Shown here: piece after piece, positions 1 through 31,526 of the stretch
Position numbering within the stretch: the stretch's first letter is position 1
How the letters are laid out: each line of letters begins with the position of its first letter
Source of the DNA: Lepidodermella squamata
Lineage: Eukaryota > Animalia > Gastrotricha
DNA length: 64,000 bases
Direction of reading: 5' to 3'
Assembly (NCBI GenBank): GCA_047495785.1
Contig: JBLDXI010000013.1
Location: 1-64,000, forward strand
Translations under genes and position numbers: made by a program
The notes under the pieces: generated by a model
Databases searched by the model: none
What the model was told of the DNA's origin: nothing
What the model saw: only the letters and a program-made list of their open reading frames with translations

Positions 1-15
1 ACATCTCGTGAGAGT
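1..15. other. Probable untrimmed PacBio barcode adapter remnant (bc1003-type, lacking first 2 nt)
   Basis: ACATCTCGTGAGAGT at the very start is identical to 1119-1133. As I recall it, it matches PacBio barcode bc1003 ACACATCTCGTGAGAG plus the T overhang. Confidence 0.8.
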
Positions 16-16
16 C

Positions 17-395
17 ATACGGATAAGCAAATGTAACCGAATCAACTAATAAAAGAACGTATTGTAAAGAAATTGTGTGCCTTTTTTATAAGAAAGTAAA
101 CACATTCCATTGTTTTCCAAACAAATTACCTTGGAGACACAGACCCAACATAGCGCGGCAAAACAGAAAAACATAAATATTCAATCGATAGTTCAAAATA
201 TCGATAGTTGGTGCAGGTTTACAATTATTGGATGAGCAAGATACTGGACAAGTTATTAGGGTTGAGAATTGATTCCAGCTTGATGGAAACTTGAATTATT
301 TAATTTGGTCGTAATTCTGAAATTCTACGGTGAATTGGGATTGCAAAACCCACACCTACCCTAAACTAACCCTAACCAGAACCCTGAACCTAACC
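17..395 (+). repeat. Fragment of subtelomeric L unit
   Basis: Near-identical to 16016-16395 (one 1-nt indel). It runs into pure CCCTAA repeats at the degenerate telomere-like segment gaacctaacc. Confidence 0.9.
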
Positions 396-1116
396 CTAAC
401 CCTAACCCTAACCCTAACCCTAACCCTAACCCTAACCCTAACCCTAACCCTAACCCTAACCCTAACCCTAACCCTAACCCTAACCCTAACCCTAACCCTA
501 ACCCCTAACCCTAACCCTAACCCTAACCCTAACCCTAACCCTAACCCTAACCCTAACCCTAACCCTAACCCTAACCCTAACCCTAACCCTAACCTAACCC
601 TAACCCTAACCCTAACCCTAACCCTAACCCTAACCCTAACCCTAACCCTAACCCTAACCCTAACCCTAACCCTAACCCTAACCCTAACCCTAACCCTAAC
701 CCTAACCCTAACCCTAACCCTAACCCTAACCCTAACCCTAACCCTAACCCTAACCCTAACCCTAACCCTAACCCTAACCCTAACCCCTAACCCTAACCCT
801 AACCCTAACCCTAACCCTAACCCTAACCCTAACCCTAACCCTAACCCTAACCCTAACCCTAACCCTAACCCTAACCCTAACCCTAACCCTAACCCTAACC
901 CTAACCCTAACCCTAACCCTAACCCTAACCCTAACCCTAACCCTAACCCTAACCCTAACCCTAACCCTAACCCTAACCCTAACCCTAACCCTAACCCTAA
1001 CCCTAACCCTAACCCTAACCCTAACCCTAACCCTAACCCTAACCCTAACCCTAACCCTAACCCTAACCCTAACCCTAACCCTAACCCTAACCCTAACCCT
1101 AACCCTAACCCTAACC
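387..1116 (+). repeat. Telomeric repeat tract (CCCTAA)n, ~120 units
   Basis: Direct read. A few 1-nt slips occur (CCCCTAA, CCTAA). Confidence 0.99.
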
Positions 1117-1133
1117 ACACATCTCGTGAGAGT
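1117..1133. other. Probable PacBio barcode adapter (bc1003-type) embedded in telomeric tract
   Basis: ACACATCTCGTGAGAGT interrupts the CCCTAA array, and the same sequence is at position 1. Confidence 0.8.
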
Positions 1134-1176
1134 CCTAACCCTAACCCTAACCCTAACCCTAACCCTAACCCAACCC
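1134..1176 (+). repeat. Telomeric cap of PLE copy 1
   Basis: (CCCTAA)n ending in the variant CCCAACCC, directly joined to 5'-truncated element sequence. Confidence 0.95.
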
Positions 1177-1914
1177 GGGAGCATCGATTTAGTCGTCGCC
1201 CCAGCTGCCAGTGTTTCACCGATAGCCAGCGTCTCACATCCCACGGCCGTCGACCTGGATCTTTTTGCAATTCCCGGTACACCCGCACTTACAGAACCAC
1301 CAGTACGTAATGCGGACTTGGAGACAATGGCTAATGAGAACATCGATGTCGACGCACCTGGTACTTCATCCACTCCGATGCTATCTGTCGTACGCGAGGA
1401 TGTCGATATCGATACGCCTGGTACTTCCTTCCCTCCGATGCTAGTTGCTGTAGCAGCTCCAACTCCACAAACCGGCGGCAAGCGCGTGCTGTCGTCTACT
1501 TGCTTCTTTCGTTCGCCAAGTGTGACTTCCTCGGGTCTGGCAAAACGAACCAAGGCTAATGTCACATGTGAATCAGATATCGAAGATGATGACGATTTCT
1601 CCGTCACCTCAACACCGACGACATCCCAAGTTTCGAAGGCCCACAAGGTCAGTGGATCGCTACGTTACGAAGCGGAAAAACGGTTTTGGTTGGAACTCGT
1701 GGCCGATCCGGCTTGGATCGGCAAAGTGTTGTTCGTCAAGCCGGCAAAGGGTGAATTGATTTGTAAAATCAAGAATTGCGGTTTCGGCTGCGTGAAAATA
1801 GGTGGTATGATCGGACACTTCACTGCCACGCATCCCTCAATGGCGCCGACGGCTACACGGCTGGCTGACCTGCGCACAGAGAAAATGGCACTTCACTTAT
1901 CGAAGCTGAAGTAA
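1177..1914 (+). pseudogene. 5'-truncated zinc-finger ORF of PLE copy 1
   Basis: Same translation as the C-terminal part of 7091-8164 (GSIDLVV...LHLSKLK), apart from one A/V change. Confidence 0.85.
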
Positions 1915-2468
1915 CTGAACAATTTCCTGATGTTCTGTTGTCTTTTTTCTTGTTGATGAATGCCTGTAGGCGAGAAATTGTTGAATTGTTGAACGATGAA
2001 CACAGGCTCTGGAATAAAATGAAATGTTGAAACTAGATTTGGCTGTCTTTTGTTATTTACTTGGTGTCAAAAAGAGTCTAAACTTGCTGTCTTATTGAAA
2101 GGTCAAAGCCAGGCAAAACCTTCACAGATGAATTTAAAAAAATCTCTTGTTTCAACGGCGGATCTCAGGAAAGTCGATACTCAGATAAATTAAAAAAGGA
2201 TCACCCTAAAAAACTAATGGGTCAGGATAGTATGAGGCAGCCTGGGAATCATCTCCGTCTGCGTGAAGAGGGAGGGATAATGTCATAGTACTAAACGAGT
2301 ACTCAATACAGCAGGAACACGGGATTGTCAACAAGACATGTGATACTGCCTATTTGGGTCCCTACCCCAACCATATCTACATATAGGGAATGAATACTAA
2401 GATAGCGGAGTAGACAATAGAGATACTGAGGGTAGGATAACGAGACTAAAACCCGAAAATAGGGCAAG

Positions 2469-2703
2469 ATCTATCTCTATCTCTATCCCTATCTCTATCT
2501 CTATCCCTATCCATATCCCTATCCCTATCCCTATCCTTATCCTTATCCCTATCCTCATCCTTATCCTTATCCTTATCCTCATCCTCATCCTTATCCGTAT
2601 CCTTATCCTTATCCCTATCCGTATCCTTATCTCTATCCCTGTCCGTATCCTTATCTCTATCCCTATCCCCATCCTTATCTCTATCCACACCCCTATCCTT
2701 ATC
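2469..2703 (+). repeat. Degenerate hexamer microsatellite (CCCTAT/CTCTAT/CCTTAT) in PLE copy 1
   Basis: Direct read. Equivalent tracts are at ~8719-8935 and ~14093-14333, with different lengths. Confidence 0.95.
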
Positions 2704-2983
2704 TTGATCTATGATAAGGATATGATTAGAGATTGTGGAGATAAGAGGGCGGGAGAGCCGGAGGAAGGGCATATGAGTACATTTAGCATTTATTTCAACT
2801 ACTTCGAAGTTGAAAACCTATTCCGAACTTCATCCCTATTCTGGCTAGGATGACCTTGAAATAGCATGCGGCTATTATTCCCGCCAAAAGCCATGTGCTC
2901 GCCACGTGGCGCAGTAGAAAGACGGTAGCGCTGTTTATAAACGCTGCTCATTCGATTCATTATCTCTACGCTTAACAAATACT

Positions 2984-3054
2984 AGCAACTGAAGTCACTG
3001 ATGAGCCTGTTACCCCCAGGCGAAACCGGTCTGACTACTCACGGGGTTGTTGCT
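2984..3054 (+). ncRNA. Type I hammerhead ribozyme (PLE copy 1)
   Basis: Helix I AGTCA/TGACT, core CTGATGA (2998-3004), helix II GCCTG/CAGGC, GAAA, minimal palindromic helix III ACCGGT, GUC cleavage after 3031. Confidence 0.93.
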
Positions 3055-3140
3055 TTTTCATTCTAGACTGTTTTTTCGAGTATAGCCAGTTATAAATGGC
3101 ATTTTTCCGCATAATTTTAATTGTTTTATTTATAGCTATT

Positions 3141-3418
3141 GCTTCCCTATACGGGTGGCTGCCTTTTATTTTACTTCCCTATATGGGTGGTCATGGCTTG
3201 AACAATTATAGGTTATAACTGGTATTATTTCTTAGATAATTACGTGAAATAATACCGTTATATTATGGTTTTTTTCAAATTGTCCTCTCTATTTTTGCAG
3301 CTATTGCTTCCCTTTATGGGTGGCTGTTTTTAATTTGCTTCCCTGTATGGGTGGCTTTGTCCATTTTACTACCCAGACGGGTGCTAAAATTATTATAAGC
3401 TTCCCTTTATGGGTGGCC
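3141..3418 (+). repeat. Array of ~6 short hairpin motifs (GCTTCCC-N5-GGGTGGC) in PLE
   Basis: Repeated motif gcttccc(tttat/tatac/tgtat)gggtggc. Also present at ~9373-9650 and ~14772-15049. Confidence 0.85.
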
Positions 3419-3666
3419 ATGTCATTTATGCCATGTTCTCACTAGAGGCATGTCGCATTTTTGAGCGCAATTAGCGTCATCTCTACTGTTTTGCTCAATA
3501 ATAACATTGTTATGTTCTCCTTTTTAGAAGAATATTACTGAAAGTAATTACGTCCACAGCGAGATCGACTCTACCAACACCTTTGCCAAAAACTGAGGTA
3601 AATTGTGCCATTCCATTTCATTTTTAGAGATTATTTAACGATAGAGAGGATTTGTGACGTTTTCGT

Positions 3667-3756
3667 CCCTATCCCTATCTCTATCCCTATCTCTATCCCT
3701 ATCCCTATCCCTATCCCTATCTCTATCTCCGTCCCTATCTCTATCTCTATCCCTAT
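3667..3756 (+). repeat. Second (CCCTAT/CTCTAT)n microsatellite in PLE
   Basis: Direct read. Also at ~9899-9988 and ~15297-15387. Confidence 0.95.
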
Positions 3757-4003
3757 TTGTGGATTGATAGTCATTTTCATAATAGGAAAGGGATTTTCCG
3801 CTATTTTTCGAGATTAACTGCGTCTCAAGTAGCATTAGAGCTAACTGCCGGGGTGCTTAGGCTACCTGTCTGGTAATTCTCTCCTAACTAACCCTAACTT
3901 TTGAGCTCGAGTCATGAGTACGATGTGAACGAGATGCGGTTTCTCATCTCGTATTATTTGCGGGTCAAATCTTTTAAACTGTTCAATTTTCATCTTTTGC
4001 CAG

Positions 4004-6964
4004 ATGTCAGAAATGCCCGGTAAGCATAACAACCGCGGTCCCCGAAACTTCGGCCCTAACCAACAGCGCGGCAACTACAACAACAATCGTAACCAACCTT
4101 ACGGCAATAGTAACGGCAATACCAACGGTAACGGTCACGGCAACGTCAACGGCAACAGTCGAGAACGAGCCCCGGTCAACACTCTCAAGGCGAAAATCGA
4201 CGAAGCCTTCCGAATGTACCAACCGAAAGCGGCGCAAAGTGTTGACGCGCTAGATCGTGCAATCGTCATGTTCGGAGCTCTATGGCCTAGAGCCTTTGAA
4301 GTCTTTGATCTATTGTCGGGCTATAAAATCCGATGCGCCAACCTGGGTAAAGACAATGCAGTCGTTCAACAGGTTTGTACTCTAAAACCTAACTGCATTG
4401 ATAATATATCTGTATTTTTCTGATAGGTCGTGATTGCCTTAGTCGATGGAGTCATCAGTGACTATGCCCCTTTGTTAACTGAAGCCATCGACCTGGCTGT
4501 CAAGGTGGCTATGGAGCAAGAGCGATTGAAGTTAACGGCGGCACTGACTAGTCTGGCTGCCAATTTCTTGAACCTCAAGGAGGTGTACGAGACAGCCACC
4601 CAAGGCACACGTTGTTCCCTGGATGACGCCTTGTTGGCAACTTGGCGCGACGCGGACAAACGGTCTGTGGGTCTGACTGCCGACATCAAAATTACTTGGA
4701 CGCCTTGGCCAATGATGGCTACTGCACGTACCATCGGGCGCACGTTGAACACTGAAGGTCTATGTCGCGTTGCGGCATCTGTGTTAAGTCACGACTGGAC
4801 GACCGGAGGGACTGATAAAGAAACGCGCTTCGTCACCTTGCTACGCCTTACGGACGAATTCCTGGCACTCGAGTTGGCCACGAATGGGACCATCGATGGT
4901 CCTCCTACCCAGCCTGGTGCTGCTGGCACGTCCTCAGGTAGGAAAATTAGCGATTCTACTTTTTCCCTAAGTACGAACTGTTTAACATGGGCAGATTTAG
5001 ATTTCTTTAATTGCGAAGCCCTGAAAACCAATTCAAAATTCATTATTGACTTTTTATTTGCACGCCCCAGCGTATGGTACCTAACCTGTAGAATGGAACC
5101 CGGGCATCCAATGCGATGCCTTCGCTCCAATTTTCAAAACAACAAACTTTGGGTTCTTTGTCAGGAACATGCCTCTTGCTTTCACTCTGAAAAACAATTA
5201 TGGTTTCACTTGGAGAATTGCCACCTACAGGATCTCTTTATTATCGAGGACATTCCTCGGCTTACCTCGCATTTATACGGGGTTAACATTTCTCTAATGG
5301 ATAAATTACCAATCCACTCCTCGTCCCAACCAGCTTTGAATTTATCTGAGGACAATAAAAAATGGGAGAAGAAAGGTGTTATTGACCTCACCGGGAAACT
5401 ATCTATCGAGTTAAAAAACCAGCTATCCAAAGGTTTAAAATTTGTTAAACTTACTCGTAGTGATCTCCGTAATTCCATTTTTGAAGCAAAGGAAAAAATC
5501 GATGAACTCAAAGTAAAATTGAGTCGCAAATTGAGAAGAGACCTAAATTTTAAGCTCCGTAATGAGCTATCTAGTCTCAATAATGATATCCCCAACGTAC
5601 CCTCAGATGTCTGGATTACCAAGAGCGATAAGGGCAATGTAGTGGTTGCAATCGCTAAAAATACCTACTGTAAAATGGGTGAGAAATTTCTTAACAATGC
5701 GACTACCTTTCGTAAGACTGAAACTGATGGCTTTACGGAATTCAGAAAATCTATCAATGACCTCAGAACAGAATGGCTAGCCTTCTCCCCTGATACCCTC
5801 AATAAATGGAAAAAAGTCTTTGTCAAATCGAAAAACCTCCGCACGAAATTCATTTACTTTCTTCCAAAACTCCACAAAGCAGCCGATAATGAAAGTCTTC
5901 TGAAAGTAAGACCCATCACCGACGGAACTAATACCTACACCTCTCAAGCTGACAAAGCTCTGTATAAAAAATTACGTAAGGCAAGACTTAGCTTGACAAC
6001 GGTCGTACACAGTAGCACAGAGGTTCTTAGCGAAATTCGGGCCTTGAATGATAGTGGAAAAAACCTGGATGAAGCAATCATCTGCACCGCTGATATCAGC
6101 GACATGTACAACCAAATCCCCCTTTTTGAAGCCGTAGACGGAGTGGCTTCCTACCTCAGAGAGCACGATATCCTAGAACCTGTTGAAAGACGCTTAGTAT
6201 GCAAAGCCATTTACATTGTTTTGAGCTCAAGTTCTGTCAAATTCAATGACAAGTGGTATCGCCAAATTCAGGGTCTAGCTATGGGTGGTCATCTCTCCCC
6301 TTGGGTTGCTAATAATTGGCTCTACATACTTGAACGCAACCTGTGGATAATCCACTCACCCTTAGTAGGCTGTCGGTATCTTGATGACCTATTATCCATT
6401 TTTCTCAACAACCAGCGATCTGCTGAATTCATGAAAGAATACAGCCGTCTGCACCCCAATATAAAATTGGAAATTAACACTTCGGAGCATAGCGCCCAGT
6501 ATTTGGACCTTATCATCTATAAGAAAGATGGTCGTGTAGAAACCGGTGTCTACTTCAAACCAACTGATAGCCTCTCTCTACTGAGCAACGGTTCGGAACA
6601 CCCATCTCACATTTTTTCCGGAGTGATAGAATCACAAATCTTGAGATACTCCCGAATTGCCTCAACTTTCAAAGACTGGGCTATAGCGGTACTCAGCCTA
6701 TGTCATAGCCTCCTGAGAAGGGGATATACATGGACACTTGTGGCATCAACCATCAAGGGCACCTTGAAAAAATTGGAGAATAAGGAATGGCCCTTCATTA
6801 ATAAGAAACTAACAAATAAACCATACGAAACAATGCACGTCCTGCACTACGCAAAATCCCTTGAACCCGTATATAAAACCATTAAAAAACATGGTCGATT
6901 GGCACTTAAGCTGAATAAAAATAATAGAAAGCGTTTCACCAAATCTGAATTTTCAGGAATGTAA
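4004..6964 (+). CDS. PLE reverse transcriptase polyprotein (exons 4004-4372 + 4427-6964, ~968 aa), no GIY-YIG endonuclease
   Basis: PLE RT motifs: KSDKGN, YFLPKLHK, VRPI, TADISDMY, QGLAMGGHLSP, RYLDD, YLDL, VYFKPT, SEHP...SQILRYSRIAS, RGY. A 54-nt GT-AG intron (4373-4426) joins the 139-aa ORF in frame. No GIY-YIG motif is visible at either end. Confidence 0.9.
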
Positions 6965-7127
6965 TGGTTGGTACCCAGCAATGCGAGCCTATTAGCTGGC
7001 AGCCTCAACAACACGCTGATGTGAAATGATGATATTTGACTACAAATAAAAAAGAAAGGGGAATTACCACTGTCTTTTGAATTACTTTGGTTGCTAATCA
7101 TGATCGTAACTTTACTCTTATACTCAG

Positions 7128-8164
7128 ACTGGATCACCGGTAAGGAGTTTAGCTTCGGCCTCGTCATGGACGCCAAGCGATATGCCCCACCGGGTGGTTT
7201 TCGCGCCCCAGTACCATCACCAGTCACCTTCGGTCATCCGACGGTCGTCAGGCGTTCTTCGACGCCTTTGGTCGCACCGCGCCCGGCTGAAACGCCTCTT
7301 GACTCAGATACGGATAGTGACTCATCAGAAGATGCGTTGCTTATGCCTGCCAACTCGGAACAGATCAGTGTTGAACCAGCAGACCTTGATGTCTCTATCC
7401 TGAACCCGCCTTTCGATCAGGCGATCGGGAGCATCGATTTAGTCGTCGCCCCAGCTGCCAGTGTTTCACCGATAGCCAGCGTCTCACATCCCACGGCCGT
7501 CGACCTGGATCTTTTTGCAATTCCCGGTACACCCGCACTTACAGAACCACCAGTACGTAATGCGGACTTGGAGACAATGGCTAATGAGAACATCGATGTC
7601 GACGCACCTGGTACTTCATCCACTCCGATGCTATCTGCCGTACGCGAGGATGTCGATATCGATACGCCTGGTACTTCCTTCCCTCCGATGCTAGTTGCTG
7701 TAGCAGCTCCAACTCCACAAACCGGCGGCAAGCGCGTGCTGTCGTCTACTTGCTTCTTTCGTTCGCCAAGTGTGACTTCCTCGGGTCTGGCAAAACGAAC
7801 CAAGGCTAATGTCACATGTGAATCAGATATCGAAGATGATGACGATTTCTCCGTCACCTCAACACCGACGACATCCCAAGTTTCGAAGGCCCACAAGGTC
7901 AGTGGATCGCTACGTTACGAAGCGGAAAAACGGTTTTGGTTGGAACTCGTGGCCGATCCGGCTTGGATCGGCAAAGTGTTGTTCGTCAAGCCGGCAAAGG
8001 GTGAATTGATTTGTAAAATCAAGAATTGCGGTTTCGGCTGCGTGAAAATAGGTGGTATGATCGGACACTTCACTGCCACGCATCCCTCAATGGCGCCGAC
8101 GGCTACACGGCTGGCTGACCTGCGCACAGAGAAAATGGCACTTCACTTATCGAAGCTGAAGTAA
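7128..8164 (+). CDS. PLE downstream ORF: S/T/P/D-rich linker plus C-terminal C2H2/BED-like zinc finger
   Basis: Open in all copies. CKIKNC-x12-HFTATH (C-x4-C-x12-H-x4-H) at 8012-8083. It is preceded by a splice acceptor at 7126-7127 (alternative start ATG 7166) and followed by AATAAA at ~8263. Confidence 0.75.
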
Positions 8165-9215
8165 CTGAACAATTTCCTGATGTTCTGTTGTCTTTTTTCT
8201 TGTTGATGAATGCCTGTAGGCGAGAAATTGTTGAATTGTTGAACGATGAACACAGGCTCTGGAATAAAATGAAATGTTGAAACTAGATTTGGCTGTCTTT
8301 TGTTATTTACTTGGTGTCAAAAAGAGTCTAAACTTGCTGTCTTATTGAAAGGTCAAAGCCAGGCAAAACCTTCACAGATGAATTTAAAAAAATCTCTTGT
8401 TTCAACGGCGGATCTCAGGAAAGTCGATACTCAGATAAATTAAAAAAGGATCACCCTAAAAAACTAATGGGTCAGGATAGTATGAGGCAGCCTGGGAATC
8501 ATCTCCGTCTGCGTGAAGAGGGAGGGATAATGTCATAGTACTAAACGAGTACTCAATACAGCAGGAACACGGGATTGTCAACAAGACATGTGATACTGCC
8601 TATTTGGGTCCCTACCCCAACCATATCTACATATAGGGAATGAATACTAAGATAGCGGAGTAGACAATAGAGATACTGAGGGTAGGATAACGAGACTAAA
8701 ACCCGAAAATAGGGCAAGATCTATCTCTATCTCTATCCCTATCCATATCCCTATCCCTATCCCTATCCTTATCCTTATCCCTATCCTCATCCTTATCCTT
8801 ATCCTTATCCTCATCCTCATCCTTATCCGTATCCTTATCCTTATCCCTATCCGTATCCTTATCTCTATCCCTGTCCGTATCCTTATCTCTATCCCTATCC
8901 CCATCCTTATCTCTATCCACACCCCTATCCTTATCTTGATCTATGATAAGGATATGATTAGAGATTGTGGAGATAAGAGGGCGGGAGAGCCGGAGGAAGG
9001 GCATATGAGTACATTTAGCATTTATTTCAACTACTTCGAAGTTGAAAACCTATTCCGAACTTCATCCCTATTCTGGCTAGGATGACCTTGAAATAGCATG
9101 CGGCTATTATTCCCGCCAAAAGCCATGTGCTCGCCACGTGGCGCAGTAGAAAGACGGTAGCGCTGTTTATAAACGCTGCTCATTCGATTCATTATCTCTA
9201 CGCTTAACAAATACT

Positions 9216-9286
9216 AGCAACTGAAGTCACTGATGAGCCTGTTACCCCCAGGCGAAACCGGTCTGACTACTCACGGGGTTGTTGCT
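9216..9286 (+). ncRNA. Type I hammerhead ribozyme (PLE copy 2)
   Basis: Identical to 2984-3054. Predicted cleavage after 9263. Confidence 0.93.
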
Positions 9287-10119
9287 TTTTCATTCTAGAC
9301 TGTTTTTTCGAGTATAGCCAGTTATAAATGGCATTTTTCCGCATAATTTTAATTGTTTTATTTATAGCTATTGCTTCCCTATACGGGTGGCTGCCTTTTA
9401 TTTTACTTCCCTATATGGGTGGTCATGGCTTGAACAATTATAGGTTATAACTGGTATTATTTCTTAGATAATTACGTGAAATAATACCGTTATATTATGG
9501 TTTTTTTCAAATTGTCCTCTCTATTTTTGCAGCTATTGCTTCCCTTTATGGGTGGCTGTTTTTAATTTGCTTCCCTGTATGGGTGGCTTTGTCCATTTTA
9601 CTACCCAGACGGGTGCTAAAATTATTATAAGCTTCCCTTTATGGGTGGCCATGTCATTTATGCCATGTTCTCACTAGAGGCATGTCGCATTTTTGAGCGC
9701 AATTAGCGTCATCTCTACTGTTTTGCTCAATAATAACATTGTTATGTTCTCCTTTTTAGAAGAATATTACTGAAAGTAATTACGTCCACAGCGAGATCGA
9801 CTCTACCAACACCTTTGCCAAAAACTGAGGTAAATTGTGCCATTCCATTTCATTTTTAGAGATTATTTAACGATAGAGAGGATTTGTGACGTTTTCGTCC
9901 CTATCCCTATCTCTATCCCTATCTCTATCCCTATCCCTATCCCTATCCCTATCTCTATCTCCGTCCCTATCTCTATCTCTATCCCTATTTGTGGATTGAT
10001 AGTCATTTTCATAATAGGAAAGGGATTTTCCGCTATTTTTCGAGATTAACTGCGTCTCAAGTAGCATTAGAGCTAACTGCCGGGGTGCTTAGGCTACCTG
10101 TCTGGTAATTCTCTCCTAA

Positions 10120-10197
10120 CTAACCCTAACCCTAACCCTAACCCTAACCCTAACCCTAACCCTAACCCTAACCCTAACCCTAACCCTAACCCACCCC
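10120..10197 (+). repeat. Interstitial telomeric tract between PLE copies 2 and 3
   Basis: (CCCTAA)~12 ending CCCACCCC. Confidence 0.97.
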
Positions 10198-12339
10198 ACG
10201 CGCTTCGTTACCTTGCTACGCCTTACGGACGAATTCCTGGCACTCGAGTTGGCCACGAATGGGACCATCGATGGTCCTCCTACCCAGCCTGGTGCTGCTG
10301 GCACGTCCTCAGGTAGGAAAATTAGCGATTCTACTTTTTCCCTAAGTACGAACTGTTTAACATGGGCAGATTTAGATTTCTTTAATTGCGAAGCCCTGAA
10401 AACCAATTCAAAATTCATTATTGACTTTTTATTTGCACGCCCCAGCGTATGGTACCTAACCTGTAGAATGGAACCCGGGCATCCAATGCGATGCCTTCGC
10501 TCCAATTTTCAAAACAACAAACTTTGGGTTCTTTGTCAGGAACATGCCTCTTGCTTTCACTCTGAAAAACAATTATGGTTTCACTTGGAGAATTGCCACC
10601 TACAGGATCTCTTTATTATCGAGGACATTCCTCGGCTTACCTCGCATTTATACGGGGTTAACATTTCTCTAATGGATAAATTACCAATCCACTCCTCGTC
10701 CCAACCAGCTTTGAATTTATCTGAGGACAATAAAAAATGGGAGAAGAAAGGTGTTATTGACCTCACCGGGAAACTATCTATCGAGTTAAAAAACCAGCTA
10801 TCCAAAGGTTTAAAATTTGTTAAACTTACTCGTAGTGATCTCCGTAATTCCATTTTTGAAGCAAAGGAAAAAATCGATGAACTCAAAGTAAAATTGAGTC
10901 GCAAATTGAGAAGAGACCTAAATTTAAAGCTCCGTAATGAGCTATCTAGTCTCAATAATGATATCCCCAACGTACCCTCAGATGTCTGGATTACCAAGAG
11001 CGATAAGGGCAATGTAGTGGTTGCAATCGCTAAAAATACCTACTGTAAAATGGGTGAGAAATTTCTTAACAATGCGACTACCTTTCGTAAGACTGAAACT
11101 GATGGCTTTACGGAATTCAGAAAATCTATCAATGACCTTAGAACAGAATGGCTAGCCTTCTCCCCTGATACCCTCAATAAATGGAAAAAAGTCTTTGTCA
11201 AATCGAAAAACCTCCGCACGAAATTCATTTACTTTCTTCCAAAACTCCACAAAGCAGCCGATGATGAAAGTCTTCTGAAAGTAAGACCCATCACCGACGG
11301 AACTAATACCTACACCTCTCAAGCTGACAAAACTCTGTATAAAAAATTACGTAAGGCAAGACTTAGCTTGACAACGGTCGTACACAGTAGCACAGAGGTT
11401 CTTAGCGAAATTCGGGCCTTGAATGATAGTGGAAAAAACCTGGATGAAGCAATCATCTGCACCGCTGATATCAGCGACATGTACAACCAAATCCCCCTTT
11501 TTGAAGCCGTAGACGGAGTGGCTTCCTACCTCAGAGAGCACGATATCCTAGAACCTGTTGAAAGACGCTTAGTATGCAAAGCCATTTACATTGTTTTGAG
11601 CTCAAGTTCTGTCAAATTCAATGACAAGTGGTATCGCCAAATTCAGGGTCTAGCTATGGGTGGTCATCTCTCCCCTTGGGTTGCTAATAATTGGCTCTAC
11701 ATACTTGAACGCAACCTGTGGATAATCCACTCACCCTTAGTAGGCTGTCGGTATCTTGATGACCTATTATCCATTTTTCTCAACAACCAGCGATCTGCTG
11801 AATTCATGAAAGAATACAGCCGTCTGCACCCCAATATAAAATTGGAAATTAACACTTCGGAGCATAGCGCCCAGTATTTGGACCTTATCATCTATAAGAA
11901 AGATGGTCGTGTAGAAACCGGTGTCTACTTCAAACCAACTGATAGCCTCTCTCTACTGAGCAACGGTTCGGAACACCCATCTCACATTTTTTCCGGAGTG
12001 ATAGAATCACAAATCTTGAGATACTCCCGAATTGCCTCAACTTTCAAAGACTGGGCTATAGCGGTACTCAGCCTATGTCATAGCCTCCTGAGAAGGGGAT
12101 ATACATGGACACTTGTGGCATCAACCATCAAGGGCACCTTGAAAAAATTGGAGAATAAGGAATGGCCCTTCATTAATAAGAAACTAACAAATAAACCATA
12201 CGAAACAATGCACGTCCTGCACTACGCAAAATCCCTTGAACCCGTATATAAAACCATTAAAAAACATGGTCGATTGGCACTTAAGCTGAATAAAAATAAT
12301 AGAAAGCGTTTCACCAAATCTGAATTTTCAGGAATGTAA
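10198..12339 (+). CDS. PLE RT, copy 3 (N-terminally truncated, RT domain uninterrupted)
   Basis: 708-aa ORF that differs from copy 2 at only about three residues. Confidence 0.85.
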   Translation, partial: TRFVTLLRLTDEFLALELATNGTIDGPPTQPGAAGTSSGRKISDSTFSLSTNCLTWADLDFFNCEALKTNSKFIIDFLFARPSVWYLTCRMEPGHPMRCLRSNFQNNKLWVLCQEHASCFHSEKQLWFHLENCHLQDLFIIEDIPRLTSHLYGVNISLMDKLPIHSSSQPALNLSEDNKKWEKKGVIDLTGKLSIELKNQLSKGLKFVKLTRSDLRNSIFEAKEKIDELKVKLSRKLRRDLNLKLRNELSSLNNDIPNVPSDVWITKSDKGNVVVAIAKNTYCKMGEKFLNNATTFRKTETDGFTEFRKSINDLRTEWLAFSPDTLNKWKKVFVKSKNLRTKFIYFLPKLHKAADDESLLKVRPITDGTNTYTSQADKTLYKKLRKARLSLTTVVHSSTEVLSEIRALNDSGKNLDEAIICTADISDMYNQIPLFEAVDGVASYLREHDILEPVERRLVCKAIYIVLSSSSVKFNDKWYRQIQGLAMGGHLSPWVANNWLYILERNLWIIHSPLVGCRYLDDLLSIFLNNQRSAEFMKEYSRLHPNIKLEINTSEHSAQYLDLIIYKKDGRVETGVYFKPTDSLSLLSNGSEHPSHIFSGVIESQILRYSRIASTFKDWAIAVLSLCHSLLRRGYTWTLVASTIKGTLKKLENKEWPFINKKLTNKPYETMHVLHYAKSLEPVYKTIKKHGRLALKLNKNNRKRFTKSEFSGM

Positions 12340-12502
12340 TGGTTGGTACCCAGCAATGCGAGCCTATTAGCTGGCAGCCTCAACAACACGCTGATGTGAA
12401 ATGATGATATTTGACTACAAATAAAAGAGAAAGGGGAATTACCACTGTCTTTTGAATTACTTTGGTTGCTAATCATGATCGTAACTTTACTCTTATACTC
12501 AG

Positions 12503-13539
12503 ACTGGATCACCGGTAAGGAGTTTAGCTTCGGCCTCGTCATGGACGCCAAGCGATATGCCCCACCGGGTGGTTTTCGCGCCCCAGTACCATCACCAGTC
12601 ACCTTCGGTCATCCGACGGTCGTCAGGCGTTCTTCGACGCCTTTGGTCGCACCGCGCCCGGCTGAAACGCCTCTTGACTCAGATACGGATAGTGACTCAT
12701 CAGAAGATGCGTTGCTTATGCCTGCCAACTCGGAACAGATCAGTGTTGAACCAGCAGACCTTGATGTCTCTATCCTGAACCCGCCTTTCGATCAGGCGAT
12801 CGGGAGCATCGATTTAGTCGTCGCCCCAGCTGCCAGTGTTTCACCGATAGCCAGCGTCTCACATCCCACGGCCGTCGACCTGGATCTTTTTGCAATTCCC
12901 GGTACACCCGCACTTACAGAACCACCAGTACGTAATGCGGACTTGGAGACAATGGCTAATGAGAACATCGATGTCGACGCACCTGGTACTTCATCCACTC
13001 CGATGCTATCTGCCGTACGCGAGGATGTCGATATCGATACGCCTGGTACTTCCTTCCCTCCGATGCTAGTTGCTGTAGCAGCTCCAACTCCACAAACCGG
13101 CGGCAAGCGCGTGCTGTCGTCTACTTGCTTCTTTCGTTCGCCAAGTGTGACTTCCTCGGGTCTGGCAAAACGAACCAAGGCTAATGTCACATGTGAATCA
13201 GATGTCGAAGATGATGACGATTTCTCCGTCACCTCAACACCGACGACATCCCAAGTTTCGAAGGCCCACAAGGTCAGTGGATCGCTACGTTACGAAGCGG
13301 AAAAACGGTTTTGGTTGGAACTCGTGGCCGATCCGGCTTGGATCGGCAAAGTGTTGTTCGTCAAGCCGGCAAAGGGTGAATTGATTTGTAAAATCAAGAA
13401 TTGCGGTTTCGGCTGCGTGAAAATAGGTGGTATGATCGGACACTTCACTGCCACGCATCCCTCAATGGCGCCGACGGCTACACGGCTGGCTGACCTGCGC
13501 ACAGAGAAAATGGCACTTCACTTATCGAAGCTGAAGTAA
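12503..13539 (+). CDS. PLE zinc-finger ORF, copy 3
   Basis: Same as 7128-8164 with one I/V change. Confidence 0.75.
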
Positions 13540-14614
13540 CTGAACAATTTCCTGATGTTTTGTTGTCTTTTTTCTTGTTGATGAATGCCTGTAGGCGAGA
13601 AATTGTTGAATTGTTGAACGATGAACACAGGCTCTGGAATAAAATGAAATGTTGAAACTAGATTTGGCTGTCTTTTGTTTTTTACTTGGTGTCAAAAAGA
13701 GTCTAAACTTGCTGTCTTATTGAAAGGTCAAAGCCAGGCAAAACCTTCACAGATGAATTAAAAAAATCTCTTGTTTCAACGGCGGATCTCAGGAAAGTCG
13801 ATACTCAGATAAATTAAAAAAGGATCACCCTAAAAAACTAATGGGTCAGGATAGTATGAGGCAGCATGGGAATCATCTCCGTCTGCGTGAAGAGGGAGGG
13901 ATAATGTCATAGTACTAAACGAGTACTCAATACAGCAGGAACACGGGATTGTCAACAAGACATATGATACTGCCTATTTGGGTCCCTACCCCAACCATAT
14001 CTACATATAGGGAATGAATACTAAGATAGCGGAGTAGACAATAGAGATACTGAGGGTAGGATAACGAGACTAAAACCCGGAGATAGGGCAAGATCTATCT
14101 CTATCTCTATCCCTATCTCTATCTCTATCCCTATCCATATCCCTATCCCTATCCTTATCCTTATCCCTATCCTTATCCTTATCCTTATCCTTATCCCTAT
14201 CCCTATCCGTATCCTTATCCTTATCCTTATCCCTATCCCTATCCCTATCCGTATCCGTATCTCTATCCCTATCCCTATCCCTATCCCTATCCCTATCCCT
14301 ATCCTTATCTCTATCCACACCCCTATCCTTATCTTGATCTATGATAAGAATATGATTAGAGATTGTGGAGATAAGAGGGCGGGAGAGCCGGAGGAAGGGC
14401 ATATGAGTACATTTGGCATTTATTTCAACTACTTCGAAGTTGGAAAACCTATTCCGAACTTCATCCCTATTCTGGCTAGGATGACCTTGAAATAGCATGC
14501 GGCTATTATTCCCGCCAAAAGCCATGTGCTCGCCACGTGGCGCAGTAGAAAGACGGTAGCGCTGTTTATAAACGCTGCTCATTCGATTCATTATCTCTAC
14601 GCTTAACAAATACT

Positions 14615-14685
14615 AGCAACTGAAGTCACTGATGAGCCTGTTACCCCCAGGCGAAACCGGTCTGACTATTCACGGGGTTGTTGCT
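14615..14685 (+). ncRNA. Type I hammerhead ribozyme (PLE copy 3)
   Basis: Same core and helices as the other copies. Predicted cleavage after 14662. Confidence 0.93.
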
Positions 14686-15518
14686 TTTTCATTCTAGACT
14701 GTTTTTTCGAGTATAGCCAGTTATAAATGGCATTTTTCCGCATAATTTTAATTGTTTTATTTATAGCTATTGCTTCCCTATACGGGTGGCTGCCTTTTAT
14801 TTTACTTCCCTATATGGGTGGTCATGGCTTGAACAATTATAGGTTATAACTGGTATTATTTCTTAGATAATTACGTGAAATAATACCGTTATATTATGGT
14901 TTTTTTCAAATTGTCCTCTCTATTTTTGCAGCTATTGCTTCCCTTTATGGGTGGCTGTTTTTGATTTGCTTCCCTGTAAGGGTGGCCTTGTCCATTTTAC
15001 TACCCAGACGGGTGCTAAAATTATTATAAGCTTCCCTTTATGGGTGGCTATGTCATTTATGCCATGTTCTCACTAGAGGCATGTCGCATTTTTGAGCGCA
15101 ATTAGCGTCATCTCTACTGTTTTGCTCAATAATAACATTGTTATGTTCTCCTTTTTAGAAGAATATTACTGAAAGTAATTACGTCCACAGCGAGATCGAC
15201 TCTACCAACACCTTTGCCAAAAACTGAGGTAAATTGTGCCTTTCCATTTCATTTTTAGAGATTATTTAACGATAGAGAGGATTTGTGACGTTTTCGTCCC
15301 TATCCCTATCTCTATCCCTATCCCTATCTCTATCCCTATCCCTATCCCTATCTCTATCTCCATCCCTATCTCTATCTCTATCCCTATTTGTGGATTGATA
15401 GTCATTTTCATAATAGGAAAGGGATTTTCCGCTATTTTTCGAGATTAACTGCGTCTCAAGTAGCATTAGAGCTAACTGCCGGGGTGCTTAGGCTACCTGT
15501 CTGGTAATTCTCTCCTAA

Positions 15519-15710
15519 CTAACCCTAACCCTAACCCTAACCCAACCCACACTAACCCTAACCCTAACCCTAACCCTAACCCTAACCCTAACCCTAACCC
15601 TAACCCTAACCCTAACCCTAACCCTAACCCTAACCCTAACCCTAACCCTAACCCTAACCCAACCCTAACCCCCTAACCCTAACCCTAACCCTAACCCTAA
15701 CCCTAACCCC
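15519..15710 (+). repeat. Interstitial telomeric tract with variant units
   Basis: (CCCTAA)n with CCCAA, CCCACACTAA and CCCCCTAA variants. Confidence 0.97.
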
Positions 15711-16659: not shown

Positions 16660-19600
16660 GTTTGCCCTTCGAATTTCATGTCAACTTGATAGATTCTCAG
16701 CCAATTTCAGAATTATTCACAGGCATAGTGTTATAAGGTCTCCAGATGACGAATAGGTCGCCTAAAACCATGTACGGTTAACGGTAAAAGCTCCAAATAG
16801 GTTCAAGATGACCTATTTTGAGTTTGAGATATTCACTTTTGGCATTTCAAAATAATTCATAATTTCTCGGATCTTCAGTCAATTGGCGATTAAGCGCATG
16901 GAAATAGTATTATCGGGTCCGCTGATGGCGGAAATGTGGTCGAAAATCATGTTTGGTCAACGGAAAAGGTTCCAGATCGATTCCAGATGACCTTATTTAA
17001 TTTTAAGAATTTCACCTTTGGTACTGCCAAAGAAATTCATATTTATTCGGATCTTGGGTGAATTTTCTAGCGTTGGAATGGAAATCATATTTTCGGATCC
17101 GCCGATCAAGATAATGTGGTCAAAACCCTTGCACGGTGAACAGAAAAGGTTTCAGATCGATTCCAAGTGTGCTATTTTGAGATCCTAAAATTGACTTTTG
17201 GCATTTCAAATAATTTCATAATTTTTCGGATCATCATGCATTTCTTGATTAAACTGTTGGACATGGCGTTATCGAGTCCGCTTAACGCGGGGATGTGGTC
17301 AGTGGATATGTTCGGCCAATGACAAAGGTTCCAGATCGATTCCAAGTGACCTACTTCAGTTTTCAGATTTTCACTTTCGGATTTTATAAAAATATTGATT
17401 ATCCCTCGGATCTTCAGGCGGTTGTCGATTAATCAAATAAGCATCATCGGGTCCACCAACAACGATTGTGGGGTTGAGACCATGCACTGGTAACGTAAAA
17501 GGTTCCAGCGAGGTACCAATTGACCTTTGTGAGTAATGTAGAAGCCATGTTTGGCTTTTCAAATTTCATCTCAACATGACGAATCCTAAGCCAATTTGTG
17601 AATTATTTACAGGAATCGTGCTATCAGGTCCGCTGATGGCGATTACGTGGTTGAAAACCATGTACGGTGAAGGGAAAAGGTTCCAGATCGTTCAAAAATG
17701 ACCCATTTTGAGTTCGATCTGGTCACGGTTGACGTTTCAAATTTCATCTAAACTTACCGGATTCGGAGCCAATTGGTGAAATATTGACAGGAATAGTACT
17801 TTCAAGACAGCTGATGACGAATATCAAGTCGAAAAACACACCCGATTCGAGATAAAGGTTCCAGATCGATCCCAAATGACATACTTTAAGTTGGAAATTA
17901 TCACTTTTGGACTATTTGGACCTTTCAAAATAGTCAGGGATTTCTCGGATTCCCATGCTTTTGCCGATTAAATACATGGAATTGGTACTTTCAGGGCTCC
18001 TGAGCACGAATATGATGCCAGATTCGCGAGGGAATCTCGGAAAAAGGTTCCAGGTCGTTTCCAAATGACCTAGTTTGAACTTGATGTTTTGTAATTAAGC
18101 ATTTCGAAATTATTCATGAATTCTCGGATCTTGAGGGGATTTTCGGCTATTGGAATGAAATAGTACTATCGGGTCAACCGATCATGAATGTGTCGTCCAA
18201 ACCTTGGTACGGTGAACAAAAAAAGGTTCCAGAACGATTCCAAGTGACCCACTTCGGGCTTCAAATGTTCACTTTTGGCATCTTAAAATAATTCATTATT
18301 CCTCGAATTTTCTGGCACTGGTCGATTAATCGCATGGAAATAGTATTATCGGGTCCGCTAATGACGATTACGTGGTTGAAAACCATGTACGGTGAAGGGA
18401 AAAGGTTCCAGATCGGTTCCAGATGGCCTATTTTGAGATCGACCTGGTCACGGTTGACCTTTCAAATTTCATCTATACTTCCCGGATTCTTGGTCACTTC
18501 GTGAATAAATCGCGGGAATAGTAATGTCAGGTCCGCCGATAAAGAATATCAAATCGGATTAAGAAGGCTGTCTACCATAAAGGTTCCAGAGCGAATCGAA
18601 ATCACCTATTTTGAAGTTGAAAATAATTTGTTACCTTTCAGTTTTGATTTTAACTTGACGGATCCTGAGCCATTTGGTGAGAAATTTACGGGAATAGCAC
18701 AATCAGGTCCGCTGATGAGGAATATCAAGTCGAAAAACACACCCGATTCGCGATAAAAGATCCAGATCGATCCCAAATGACCTACTTGGATTTTTAAATT
18801 TTCATGTTTGACCTTTCAAATGGGTTGTTAAATTGTCGGATTCTTCGCCAATTTGTGAATAATTTACAGGAATCATGATATGAGGTCCGCTGATGACGAT
18901 AACGTGGTTGAAAACCGTGTACGGTGAAGGGAAAAGGTTCCAGACCGATCCCAAATGACCTACTTTGACTTTTAAATTTTCATGATTGACCTTTCAAATT
19001 TGATCTTAACTTATCGGATTCTCGGCCAGTTTGTGAATAATTTACAGGAATCGTGCTATCAGGTCCGCTGATGGCGATTACGTGGTTGAAAACCATGTAC
19101 GGTGAAGGGAAAAGGTTCCAGATCGTTCAAAAATGACCCATTTTGAGTTCGATCTGGTCACCGTTGACGTTTCAAATTTCATCTAAACTTACCGGATTCA
19201 GAACCAATTGGTGAAATATTTATGGGAATAGTACTTTCGAGTCAGCTGATGACGAATATCAGGTCGGATCAAGACGGCTGTCGACAATAAAGGTTCCGGA
19301 GCGAACTAAAATCATCGATTTCGAAATTGGGATTTTCACTTTTGGCATTTCAAAATAATTCATAACTTCTCGGATCTTCAGTCAATTGCCGATTAATCGC
19401 ATGGAAATAGCAATATCGGGTCCGCTGATGACGGAAATATGGTTGAAAACCATGTACGGTGAAGGGAAAAGGTTCCAGATCGGTTCCAGATGACCTACTT
19501 TGAGATTTTAAAATTTCACTTCGTCCGGTTCAAATTCTTCAACAATTCCGGTGATCCTGAGTTAACTGTTGATTAAACACAAAGAATAAGTAAAATAGGG

Positions 19601-19690
19601 TCCGCTGATCACGGAAATCATATCCAAAACGAGGTGCGTCTAATATTGAGGGTTCCAGATTTATTTAACGTGACCTGTTGGGTCATAATT
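16660..19690 (+). repeat. ~179-bp satellite, ~17 diverged monomers
   Basis: The AGGTTCCAG anchor recurs about every 174-189 bp. Same-order arrays are at ~21500-24720, ~27240-30460 and ~32990-35957. Confidence 0.93.
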
Positions 19691-25712: not shown

Positions 25713-25785
25713 TAACCCTAACCCTAACCCTAACCCTAACCCTAACCCTAACCCTAACCCTAACCCTAACCCTAACCCTAACCCT
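25713..25785 (+). repeat. Interstitial telomeric tract
   Basis: (CCCTAA)~12. Confidence 0.97.
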
Positions 25786-26756: not shown

Positions 26757-26810
26757 AACCCTAACCCTAACCCTAACCCTAACCCTAACCCTAACCCTAA
26801 CCCTAACCCT
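26757..26810 (+). repeat. Interstitial telomeric tract
   Basis: (CCCTAA)~9. Confidence 0.97.
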
Positions 26811-31453: not shown

Positions 31454-31526
31454 TAACCCTAACCCTAACCCTAACCCTAACCCTAACCCTAACCCTAACC
31501 CTAACCCTAACCCTAACCCTAACCCT
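31454..31526 (+). repeat. Interstitial telomeric tract
   Basis: Same length as 25713-25785. Confidence 0.97.

What the first reader, a model, noticed from the sequence alone, without database searches (positions are those of the whole stretch)
1176..10130. A 1.4-unit seamless tandem and the ribozyme position suggest a circular RNA / rolling-circle template
Seen: 1176-10130 is ~1.43 units with no telomeric tract at the internal 3898/3899 junction. The hammerhead cleavage site lies ~860 nt upstream of the fixed 3' end, and every copy spans it. Inference: a linear ribozyme-cut RNA could not template such copies. A monomer cut at two ribozymes (3032-9263) and circularised, as retrozyme RNAs are, then primed internally at CUAACCCUAAC, would yield exactly this longer-than-unit product. 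An uncleaved read-through transcript from a tandem donor is the alternative.
Basis: inference. Interest (0 to 1): 0.75.

Follow-up and report, generated by a model that had tools for sequence, protein, structure and literature searches.

The report
Telomere retroelement copied longer than one unit
A reverse-transcriptase element sits on an animal chromosome end as 1.4 head-to-tail units with no telomere repeats at the join, the known "pseudo-LTR" layout of Penelope-like elements; this shows a longer-than-unit RNA template but not that the RNA is a circle.

Summary
Window 1176-10130 is 8955 nt, or 1.44 units of a 6232-nt element. The 3898/3899 join runs from CCCTAAC straight into the unit's 5' start. 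A canonical minimal hammerhead cuts at 3031/3032 and 9263/9264, 867 nt before the 3' end.

The element is an endonuclease-less Penelope-like element (PLE). Partial tandems are a defining PLE trait. Cervera & de la Pena (2014) already proposed that a ribozyme-cut, circularised RNA serves as a more-than-unit template.

New here: in this genome seven independent telomere-primed insertions, from seven element families, all read through the unit boundary (1.10 to 8.25 units). No unit 5' end is capped directly by telomere repeats. A 1605-nt non-coding partner forms eight identical seamless units.

This supports a longer-than-unit template primed at the internal telomere-complementary motif. It does not separate a circle from a linear read-through RNA or from template switching.

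Other notes of this scan reported hammerhead-bearing telomeric passenger elements elsewhere in this genome. An untrimmed adapter at window 1-16 and 1117-1134 makes the first 1.1 kb doubtful.

The parts
1..1134 (+). Doubtful leading segment. It holds an adapter 17-mer (1-16), the 3' end of another element (17-357), a CCCTAA tract (358-1116) and the adapter again (1117-1134).
   Evidence: The 17-mer ACACATCTCGTGAGAGT sits at the start or end of many contigs. It has 218 sites against 14 for the reversed control.
1135..1175 (+). Telomere repeats (CCCTAA)n capping the 5'-truncated end of the insertion. The chromosome end lies to the left.
1176..3898 (+). Upstream 5'-truncated unit (the pseudo-LTR), equal to unit positions 3528-6232. 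It starts inside ORF3.
   Evidence: 99.3% identical to 7426-10130, with 1 SNP and an 18-nt indel.
2984..3054 (+). Hammerhead ribozyme 1, minimal type I. Core at 2998-3031, cleavage at 3031/3032, helix III is the palindrome ACCGGU.
3884..3898 (+). Internal telomere-complementary motif CTAACTAACCCTAAC at the seamless join with the next unit.
3899..10130 (+). Full 6232-nt unit of an endonuclease-less Penelope-like element.
4004..4372 (+). ORF1 / exon 1 (123 codons).
4373..4426 (+). Candidate retained 54-nt GT-AG intron. Its removal would put ORF1 in frame with the RT ORF.
   Evidence: Frame arithmetic and end sequences only. There is no RNA evidence, and the exons were not joined.
4427..6964 (+). 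Reverse transcriptase ORF of the PLE clade. DKG motif at 5627-5635, RYLDD at 6374-6388, no GIY-YIG domain.
7091..8164 (+). ORF3 (357 aa). No Pfam match, Cys/His-rich C-terminus.
8721..8935 (+). (CTATCC)n microsatellite. It carries the 18-nt length difference from the upstream unit.
9216..9286 (+). Hammerhead ribozyme 2. Core at 9230-9263, cleavage at 9263/9264.
9374..9649 (+). Five CTTCCCT-loop-GGGTGGC hairpin repeats just downstream of the ribozyme. Sister families and non-coding partners have them too.
   Evidence: There are 0 matches in the other 48 kb of the window on either strand.
10116..10130 (+). Terminal copy of the telomere-complementary motif, the point where the cDNA was primed on the older chromosome end.
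10131..10197 (+). Older telomere tract between the insertions, ending in irregular repeats at the 5' cap of the next copy.
10198..15529 (+). Older 5'-truncated copy (0.86 unit, 98.9% identical) with its own hammerhead core at 14629-14662.
15530..15709 (+). Telomere tract on which the older copy was primed.

Best explanation
This is the pseudo-LTR (partial tandem) form of an endonuclease-less Penelope-like retroelement stacked on a (TTAGGG)n chromosome end.

The G-rich 3' overhang paired with the element RNA's CUAACCCUAAC motif and primed the element's telomerase-related reverse transcriptase. The enzyme copied a template that continued past the unit boundary, so the motif and the 'unit 5' end' were internal sequence of that template. 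Synthesis stopped at a random point (unit position 3528, inside ORF3), and telomerase capped the end.

The anatomy, the family membership and the rule that the boundary is read through in seven of seven insertions are shown. That one RT run made each insertion, and the priming at the motif, are inferred.

The topology of the template is not resolved. I put about 55% on a linear RNA: either an uncut multi-unit read-through transcript, or a terminally redundant RNA extended by template switching. I put about 30% on a hammerhead-cut, religated circle.
For: RT family:
- The RT has the PLE DKG motif.
- Its more distant kin (E about 1e-30 to 1e-36) carry RT plus a C-terminal GIY-YIG domain. The window RT and its closest kin carry none.

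Telomeric setting:
- CCCTAA tracts bound every insertion, and every element has its 3' end facing inward.

Seamless joins at exactly the 3' terminus:
- window, 1.44 x 6232 nt
- C32, 8.25 x 1605 nt, with 8 units and all joins identical
- C57, 1.96 x 5889, 1.75 x 6173, 1.26 x 4810 and at least 1.91 x 1793 nt
- C20, 1.10 x 3213 nt

Unit 5' ends:
- The 5' start TTTGAGCTCGAGTCATGAGTACG occurs 11 times in the genome, always directly after a 3' end.
- The upstream partial units vary in length, so this is not a fixed LTR.

Literature:
- Partial tandems define PLEs (PMC8557442).
- Frangieh et al. 2024 (PMC11167929) showed internal RT initiation in vitro and proposed a multi-copy mRNA as the template.
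Against: There are no RNA data.

Each autonomous family has only one insertion in the assembly, so donor and daughter cannot be compared.

The arrays lie near contig ends that carry untrimmed adapters, so unit counts may rest on few reads. This matters most for the 8.25-unit array and for the head-to-head inverted joins.

Simple read-through from a tandem donor can only shorten arrays over generations. Yet all three autonomous copies are below 2 units while needing templates of up to 1.96 units. Some lengthening step (circle, template switching or unequal exchange) must therefore exist and is not identified.
Confidence: 0.8

Rival explanations
1. Circular RNA, rolling-circle reverse transcription. 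The two hammerheads of a longer-than-unit transcript pair through the ACCGGU palindrome and cut out the monomer 3032-9263. The monomer is ligated into a 6232-nt circle. The telomere overhang primes at the now-internal motif, and the RT runs round more than once.
For: - The hammerhead is canonical, under structural selection and kept in autonomous and non-coding families.
- It always lies hundreds of nt upstream of the priming motif: 638, 813, 867, 867, 1168 and 2228 nt in the six families that have one. A cut RNA is therefore a dead end unless religated.
- Most insertions carry at least 2 hammerheads.
- Synthesis does not stop at unit boundaries, and the smallest unit has the most copies (8.25 x 1605 nt).
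- No donor longer than the daughters is present in the assembly.
- Circles of hammerhead-flanked tandem repeats exist in animals (PMC7229834).
- The model was proposed for PLEs in PMC4209133.
Against: - Two passes over one circle should be identical, yet 1176-3031 and 7426-9263 differ by 1 SNP and an 18-nt indel. RT error or later mutation could explain this.
- A circle needs a pre-existing join, so it explains spread, not origin.
- No genomic copy starts at the cleavage site.
- Minimal PLE hammerheads cleave poorly in vitro (PMC4209133).
- In a PLE tested in vitro, hammerhead mutants did not affect insertion, and no RNA-seq reads ended at the cut site (PMC11167929).
- Reported ribozyme circles are about 150 to over 1000 nt, not 6 kb.
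Confidence: 0.3
2. Linear read-through transcript of a tandem donor. An uncut RNA spanning two or more units is primed at an internal or last motif, as in the published model for the anole PLE.
For: - Internal initiation in vitro, a proposed multi-copy mRNA template, and a dispensable hammerhead (PMC11167929).
- The A/B differences are what a slightly heterogeneous donor would give.
Against: - Daughters cannot exceed donors, so arrays decay.
- Templates of 1.75-1.96 units and 8.25 units are needed, while no longer donor is in the assembly.
- The model leaves the conserved ribozyme without a role.
Confidence: 0.3
3. Template switching. The RT reaches the 5' end of one RNA and continues either on the 3' end of another RNA, or on the homologous repeat of a terminally redundant RNA, as in retroviral strand transfer.
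For: - The join always lies at one fixed 5' position per family, as an RNA 5' end would.
- It gives unlimited array growth without any ligation.
Against: - 8 of 8 joins in the C32 array are identical, with no untemplated bases.
- 7 of 7 insertions that reach a unit 5' end continue. The jump would have to be nearly obligatory.
- It needs an RNA 3' end made exactly at ...CCCUAAC, and nothing in the sequence explains that.
Confidence: 0.2
4. Change at the DNA level, or an artefact. The tandem arose by unequal exchange or replication slippage after insertion, or by amplification or assembly chimerism.
For: - DNA-level block duplication does occur nearby: 21067-27977 equals 26808-33714 at 99.55%, telomere tracts included.
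- Adapters remain in the assembly.
- Eight units with zero differences would fit recent unequal exchange or collapsed polishing.
Against: - Exchange between copies separated by telomere tracts would keep a tract at the join.
- A chimera would not fall to the base on the element's 3' terminus in seven families on four contigs.
- No adapter lies in 1135-15709.
Confidence: 0.05

Closest known systems
Pseudo-LTR partial tandems of Penelope-like elements (Penelope/Poseidon, Neptune, Naiad, Chlamys; PMC8557442, PMC11167929)
   Same: A full copy is preceded by a 5'-truncated copy with no spacer. The hammerhead sits in the repeated part. The RT has the DKG motif. An intron is retained in genomic copies. 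Non-autonomous partners share the 3' end and form multi-copy head-to-tail arrays.
   Different: There is no GIY-YIG endonuclease. Insertion is only onto chromosome ends, so every cDNA has a readable start (a telomere tract) and stop (a telomere cap).
Athena elements / Terminons of bdelloid rotifers (reviewed in PMC6431247)
   Same: They are endonuclease-less PLEs at telomeres with several ORFs. They form head-to-tail arrays of 5'-truncated copies capped by telomere repeats. The 3' end carries reverse-complement telomere repeats next to conserved RNA structure.
   Different: In bdelloids the hammerhead lies immediately upstream of the (ACACCC)n or (TCACCC)n stretch. Here it lies 638-2228 nt upstream, the telomere repeat is TTAGGG, and units are joined without telomere repeats. 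Placement of this RT in the Athena clade was not tested.
Coprina-1_Alen, a fungal telomeric PLE (PMC13159263)
   Same: It is an endonuclease-less PLE between TTAGGG-type tracts at chromosome ends. Its copies are flanked by direct repeats of 63-422 bp, so they too are longer than one unit.
   Different: Its repeats are short and were described as LTR-like. It is a fungal element. Its ribozyme position was not compared here.
Metazoan non-LTR retrozymes (PMC7229834; bioRxiv 10.64898/2026.07.22.740005)
   Same: They are tandem units each carrying a type I hammerhead. Their expression as circles is shown, and those authors suggest that reverse transcription of the circles gives tandem cDNA copies. 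They are thought to be passengers of PLEs. The 1605-, 1793- and 3213-nt partners here fit that description.
   Different: Known retrozymes are mostly 170-400 nt and dispersed in the genome. The partners here are 1.6-3.2 kb, are aimed at telomeres, and share both termini with a specific autonomous element. The 6232-nt unit is protein-coding.
Drosophila HeT-A / TART telomere retrotransposons (from my own knowledge, not checked here)
   Same: They form head-to-tail telomeric arrays with the 3' end inward. A promoter in the 3' region of one copy serves the next. TART has repeated terminal regions thought to be renewed during reverse transcription.
   Different: They are non-LTR (jockey-clade) elements with poly(A) ends. 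They have no ribozyme and no telomerase repeats.

Membership tests
Penelope-like elements (PLE) | RT of the PLE clade with the DKG motif | tested here: met
   DKG at 5627-5635. D143/K144 are invariant in alignment A1. There are 10303 homologs. The more distant ones carry RT plus a C-terminal GIY-YIG domain.
Penelope-like elements (PLE) | Partial tandem / pseudo-LTR: a full copy preceded by a 5'-truncated copy | tested here: met
   1176-3898 followed by 3899-10130 with a seamless join. Six further insertions show the same.
Penelope-like elements (PLE) | Minimal type I hammerhead in the repeated region | tested here: met
   Canonical core with the ACCGGU palindrome in place of helix III. 34 genome sites against 0 for the control. 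Helices I and II covary. The Rfam score is below threshold.
Penelope-like elements (PLE) | Spliceosomal intron retained in genomic copies | tested here: inconclusive
   A 54-nt GT-AG interval at 4373-4426 whose removal would fuse ORF1 to the RT in frame. There is no transcript evidence.
Penelope-like elements (PLE) | Inverted 5'-truncated copy abutting the upstream repeat | tested here: inconclusive
   Absent in the window. Present at C57 and C32, but both lie near adapter-tagged contig ends and could be chimeras.
Endonuclease-less PLE (Athena / Coprina) | No GIY-YIG endonuclease | tested here: met
   Pfam finds only RVT_1 in the RT ORF, and nothing in ORF1 or ORF3 at E up to 0.1.
Endonuclease-less PLE (Athena / Coprina) | Sits at telomeres with the 3' end inward, ending in reverse-complement telomere repeats | tested here: met
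   The 3' end ...CTAACTAACCCTAAC runs into (CCCTAA)n at 10130, 15529, C14 and C32. The 5' ends are capped by CCCTAA tracts.
Athena / Terminon (bdelloid type) | Hammerhead fold immediately upstream of the telomere-complementary stretch | tested here: not met
   The cleavage site is 867 nt upstream (638-2228 nt in related families). No CUGANGA...GAAA motif lies between the cleavage site and the 3' end. The feature is as stated in PMC6431247.
Athena / Coprina | RT groups with named Athena or Coprina RTs in a tree | not tested
   No named reference sequences could be obtained.
Retrozyme (ribozyme-made circular RNA retroelement) | Non-coding and non-autonomous | tested here: not met
   The 6232-nt unit encodes ORF1-RT and ORF3. 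Its 1605-nt partner on C32 gave no RT match and does meet this feature.
Retrozyme (ribozyme-made circular RNA retroelement) | Tandem units each bounded by hammerheads | tested here: met
   Two hammerheads 6232 nt apart in the window. Eight at 1605-nt spacing on C32.
Retrozyme (ribozyme-made circular RNA retroelement) | Accumulates as circular RNA in vivo | not testable with these tools
   No RNA data are available.

The most novel reading that the evidence does not exclude
A protein-coding, 6.2-kb retroelement RNA is cut out by its own dimeric hammerhead and ligated into a circle. That circle is the required template for telomere-primed rolling-circle reverse transcription. The CUAACCCUAAC motif then acts as an internal, telomerase-like primer-alignment site. 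The 1.6-3.2-kb non-coding partners would be telomere-aimed retrozymes using the same route.
Probability: 0.27. Interest if true: 0.8.

Novelty: new member of a known kind. Interest (0 to 1): 0.4.

Why it matters
How Penelope-like elements make their partial tandems is still an open question. Craig et al. [quoted passage not shown]

In ordinary PLEs the insertion ends are blurred by endonuclease cuts and 'tails'. Here every insertion is bracketed by telomere repeats, so the exact start and stop of each reverse-transcription run can be read from the DNA.

That yields three clean constraints:
- The unit boundary is read through every time it is reached (7 of 7).
- Products run to 8 units for a short unit.
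- No extant autonomous copy is long enough to have served as a simple read-through donor.

The system, with matched autonomous and non-coding partners, is a good place to test the circle model against the linear models with RNA experiments. It does not settle the question, and the circle idea itself dates from 2014.

Tried and rejected
- **Rfam.** At gathering threshold there were no hits in the window. At a permissive threshold the hammerhead scored only 17 bits, so I relied on core, pattern and covariation tests instead.
- **Word-based protein search with the RT.** It gave one weak hit. The exhaustive search was needed.
- **Naming the RT's relatives.** Two cluster look-ups gave no organism or family names.
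- **Metagenome scan.** It gave two short, distant contigs of no use.
- **Thermodynamic fold of the hammerhead as monomer and dimer.** It recovers helix II but says nothing about helix III, so it was not used as evidence.
- **C9 'array' of period 6031.** Dropped. It is mostly 178-bp satellite, has no telomere motif at its joins, and holds internal adapters.
- **Organism identification from the FoxC-like gene at 44719-46128.** The result is an invertebrate animal, best full-length match 52% identical to an unnamed protein, not resolved further. The contig is not human.
- **Copies beginning exactly at the ribozyme cleavage site.** None found. The sample is small, so this is a weak negative.
- **Terminon and Athena papers.** The primary papers (PMC5850863, PMC1890498) are not held. 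Their content is cited through the reviews.
- **Spliced ORF1-RT model.** The exons were not joined. Only frame arithmetic and exon-wise translation were done.

Full report
**1. What is there**

The window is the first 64 kb of contig C13 of a 121-Mb animal assembly. It is not human. The flanking genes include a FoxC-like forkhead gene whose best full-length match is only 52% identical, and introns are about 54 nt.

CCCTAA runs on the + strand, so the chromosome end lies to the left and the oldest insertions lie to the right.

BLAST of the 6232-nt unit (3899-10130) against the window finds three copies:
- 1176-3898 equals unit 3528-6232, at 99.3%.
- 3899-10130 is the full unit.
- 10198-15529 equals unit 925-6232, at 98.9%.

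CCCTAA tracts lie at 1135-1175, 10131-10197 and 15530-15709. There is none at 3898/3899, where ...CTCCTAACTAACCCTAAC runs straight into TTTTGAGCTCGAG.

The upstream partial unit differs from its counterpart by one SNP and one 18-nt microsatellite indel. At each of these two sites, one of the pair matches the older third copy.

The join falls exactly on the 3' terminus as defined at four places where that terminus meets telomere repeats (10130, 15529, C14:941 and the inner end of the C32 array), and a fifth copy on C15 ends at the same unit position. That cannot be chance.

**2. What the unit is**

- ORF1 (4004-4372) is followed by a 54-nt GT-AG interval (4373-4426). Its removal would place ORF1 in frame with the 846-codon RT ORF (4427-6964). 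This rests on frame arithmetic and exon-wise translation only.
- The RT has a weak Pfam RVT_1 match and no endonuclease domain.
- An exhaustive search finds 10303 homologs. The closest (46% and 36% identity) also lack an endonuclease. More distant ones (about 26-29% identity) are RT plus C-terminal GIY-YIG, the canonical Penelope architecture.
- The PLE-typical DKG motif and the RYLDD active site are invariant in the alignment.
- ORF3 (7091-8164) has no family match.

The element is an endonuclease-less Penelope-like element. Whether its RT belongs to the Athena or the Coprina clade could not be tested, because no named references were obtainable.

**3. The ribozyme**

The core CUGAUGAG-helix II-CGAAAC-CGGUC lies at 2998-3031, 9230-9263 and 14629-14662.

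Every conserved core position is canonical. Helix III is replaced by the self-complementary ACCGGU. This is the minimal type that Cervera & de la Pena 2014 (PMC4209133) described for PLEs and predicted to act as a dimer.

Rfam does not call it. The evidence that it is real is as follows:
- The strict pattern has 34 sites in the genome and none for the reversed control.
- Among 16 distinct versions, helix II pairs 2-5 appear as CG/UA, UA/CG, AU/UA/CG and CG/UA/GC. All are paired except two versions that my fixed five-base window for the stem does not fit: C12 has a duplicated GAUGAG before its stem, and C7 has extra bases in its 3' strand.
- The four inner pairs of helix I stay paired, with GC-to-AU changes.

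Cleavage is 867 nt before the 3' end. In related families the distance is 638, 813, 867, 1168 and 2228 nt.

This differs from bdelloid Athena and Terminons, where the hammerhead lies immediately upstream of the telomere-complementary stretch (PMC6431247).

**4. The layout is the rule in this genome**

Insertions bounded by telomere tracts were measured on four contig ends.

| Place | Unit (nt) | Units | Note |
|---|---|---|---|
| window | 6232 | 1.44 | autonomous |
| C57 | 5889 | 1.96 | autonomous |
| C57 | 6173 | 1.75 | autonomous |
| C57 | 4810 | 1.26 | no RT match at 33% identity or more, no hammerhead found |
| C57 | 1793 | at least 1.91 | no RT match; cut off by the contig end |
| C20 | 3213 | 1.10 | no RT match |
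| C32 | 1605 | 8.25 | no RT match; eight complete units with zero differences, all joins identical |

- The RTs of the 5889 and 6173 families are 65-68% identical in protein to the window RT.
- The short elements gave no RT match. Each shares both termini, the hammerhead region and the 3' domain with one autonomous family: 1605 with 6232, 1793 with 5889, 3213 with 6173.
- Every join is 'telomere-like motif | fixed 5' start' with no tract.
- The 5' start of the 6232/1605 pair occurs 11 times in the genome and is always preceded by a 3' end.
- In 7 of 7 independent insertions that reach a unit 5' end, synthesis went on. No unit 5' end is capped directly by telomere repeats.
- Copies shorter than one unit also exist (0.86 in the window, 0.09 on C15). 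The 5' stops fall at unrelated positions, so this is a truncated concatemer and not a fixed LTR.

**5. Mechanism**

The shared part of every explanation is that the template went on past the unit boundary and that the CUAACCCUAAC motif was internal to it.

The templates were therefore uncut or religated.

Sequence alone cannot tell a circle from a linear multi-unit transcript or from template switching.

Points that lean towards a self-renewing route (circle or switching):
- Read-through can only shorten arrays from one generation to the next.
- Templates of up to 1.96 units (8.25 for the short element) are required, yet no longer donor is in the assembly.
- A conserved ribozyme needs a role.

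Points that lean against a simple monomer circle:
- The two 'passes' differ at two sites within 1.9 kb.
- No genomic copy starts at the cleavage site.
- In the one PLE studied in vitro, the hammerhead was dispensable, initiation was internal on unprocessed RNA, and no RNA-seq reads ended at the cut site (PMC11167929).

Identical joins without untemplated bases weigh against repeated end-to-end jumps. Exchange at the DNA level would leave a telomere tract at the join.

**6. Relation to what is known**

- Partial tandems with hammerheads in the repeats are a defining PLE feature (PMC8557442, PMC11167929).
- The model of a ribozyme-cut, ligated circle as a more-than-unit template was stated in 2014 (PMC4209133, Discussion).
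- Cervera & de la Pena 2020 suggested that an RT copies retrozyme circles into tandem cDNAs, and a 2026 preprint describes retrozymes as likely moved by a rolling-circle mechanism (PMC7229834; bioRxiv 10.64898/2026.07.22.740005).
- A fungal telomeric PLE with flanking direct repeats has been described (PMC13159263).

What this locus adds is a new animal member on TTAGGG telomeres with the ribozyme far from the priming motif, plus unusually clean constraints from telomere-bracketed insertions.

**7. Cautions**

- The 17-mer ACACATCTCGTGAGAGT is an untrimmed adapter. It lies at the first bases of many contigs and, reverse-complemented, at many contig ends (218 sites).
- In the window it lies at 1-16 and at 1117-1134, so the first 1.1 kb may be a glued-on fragment.
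- The head-to-head inverted joins on C32 and C57 lie near adapter-tagged contig ends and may be chimeras. I do not count them as the PLE 'inverted copy' feature.
A more distant RT family with 4945-nt spacing on C21 and C46 was therefore not examined.

Noticed in passing
window 1-16 and 1117-1134; also the first bases or last bases of many G000 contigs: The 17-mer ACACATCTCGTGAGAGT looks like an untrimmed library adapter (218 sites against 14 for the reversed control). The internal copies (window 1117, C9:6216, C9:36913) mark probable chimeric joins in the assembly.
   Followed up: partly
G000:C32:4488086-4501328 (L031, L034): There are eight 100% identical seamless units, plus a 403-nt partial unit, of a 1605-nt non-coding partner of the window element. 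It has the same 5' 35 nt, hammerhead, hairpin repeats and 3' 76 nt, and it ends in a telomere tract. A head-to-head inverted array follows up to the contig end.
   Followed up: yes
window 3142-3417, 9374-9649, 14773-15048; also C57, C32 and C20 elements: Three to seven copies of a hairpin motif CTTCCCT-(3 to 6 nt)-GGGTGGC lie just downstream of the hammerhead. The stems are kept and the loops vary. The motif is found in autonomous and non-coding families and is absent from the rest of the window. It may be a protein-binding array.
   Followed up: partly
G000:C57, sense strand; unit 3' ends at positions 10947 and 16836 of the reverse-complemented stretch 235582-200001: In the 5889-nt family the terminal copy of the telomere-like motif reads CCCTAACCTAACCCTAAC, while the internal join reads CCCTAAACTAACCCTAAC. 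The one-base change towards telomere sequence, 12 nt from the end, might mean that this part comes from the primer. It could also be a plain mutation.
   Followed up: no
window 21067-27977 and 26808-33714: A 6.9-kb block is duplicated at 99.55% with a 5741-nt offset. The block contains two telomere tracts and two hammerhead-bearing non-coding elements. This is a DNA-level tandem duplication within the subtelomere.
   Followed up: partly
window 16660-19620, 21750-24650, 27500-30400, 33050-35960: Arrays of 178-bp satellite inside the non-coding telomeric elements carry CUGAUGA...GAAA-like strings. The implied helix II is only about 2 bp, so these are doubtful as ribozymes.
   Followed up: no
G000:C21:2655319-2669759, C46:1811825-1818077, C54:4291033-4298580: A distant RT family (32-34% identical, about 608-aa frames) lies near three contig ends, with copies 4945 nt apart on C21 and C46. 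These may be further tandem insertions.
   Followed up: no
window 44719-46128 (+): An intact single-exon forkhead (FoxC-like) gene lies about 8 kb inside the last telomere tract (36264-36360). It is the first clear host gene of the arm.
   Followed up: partly
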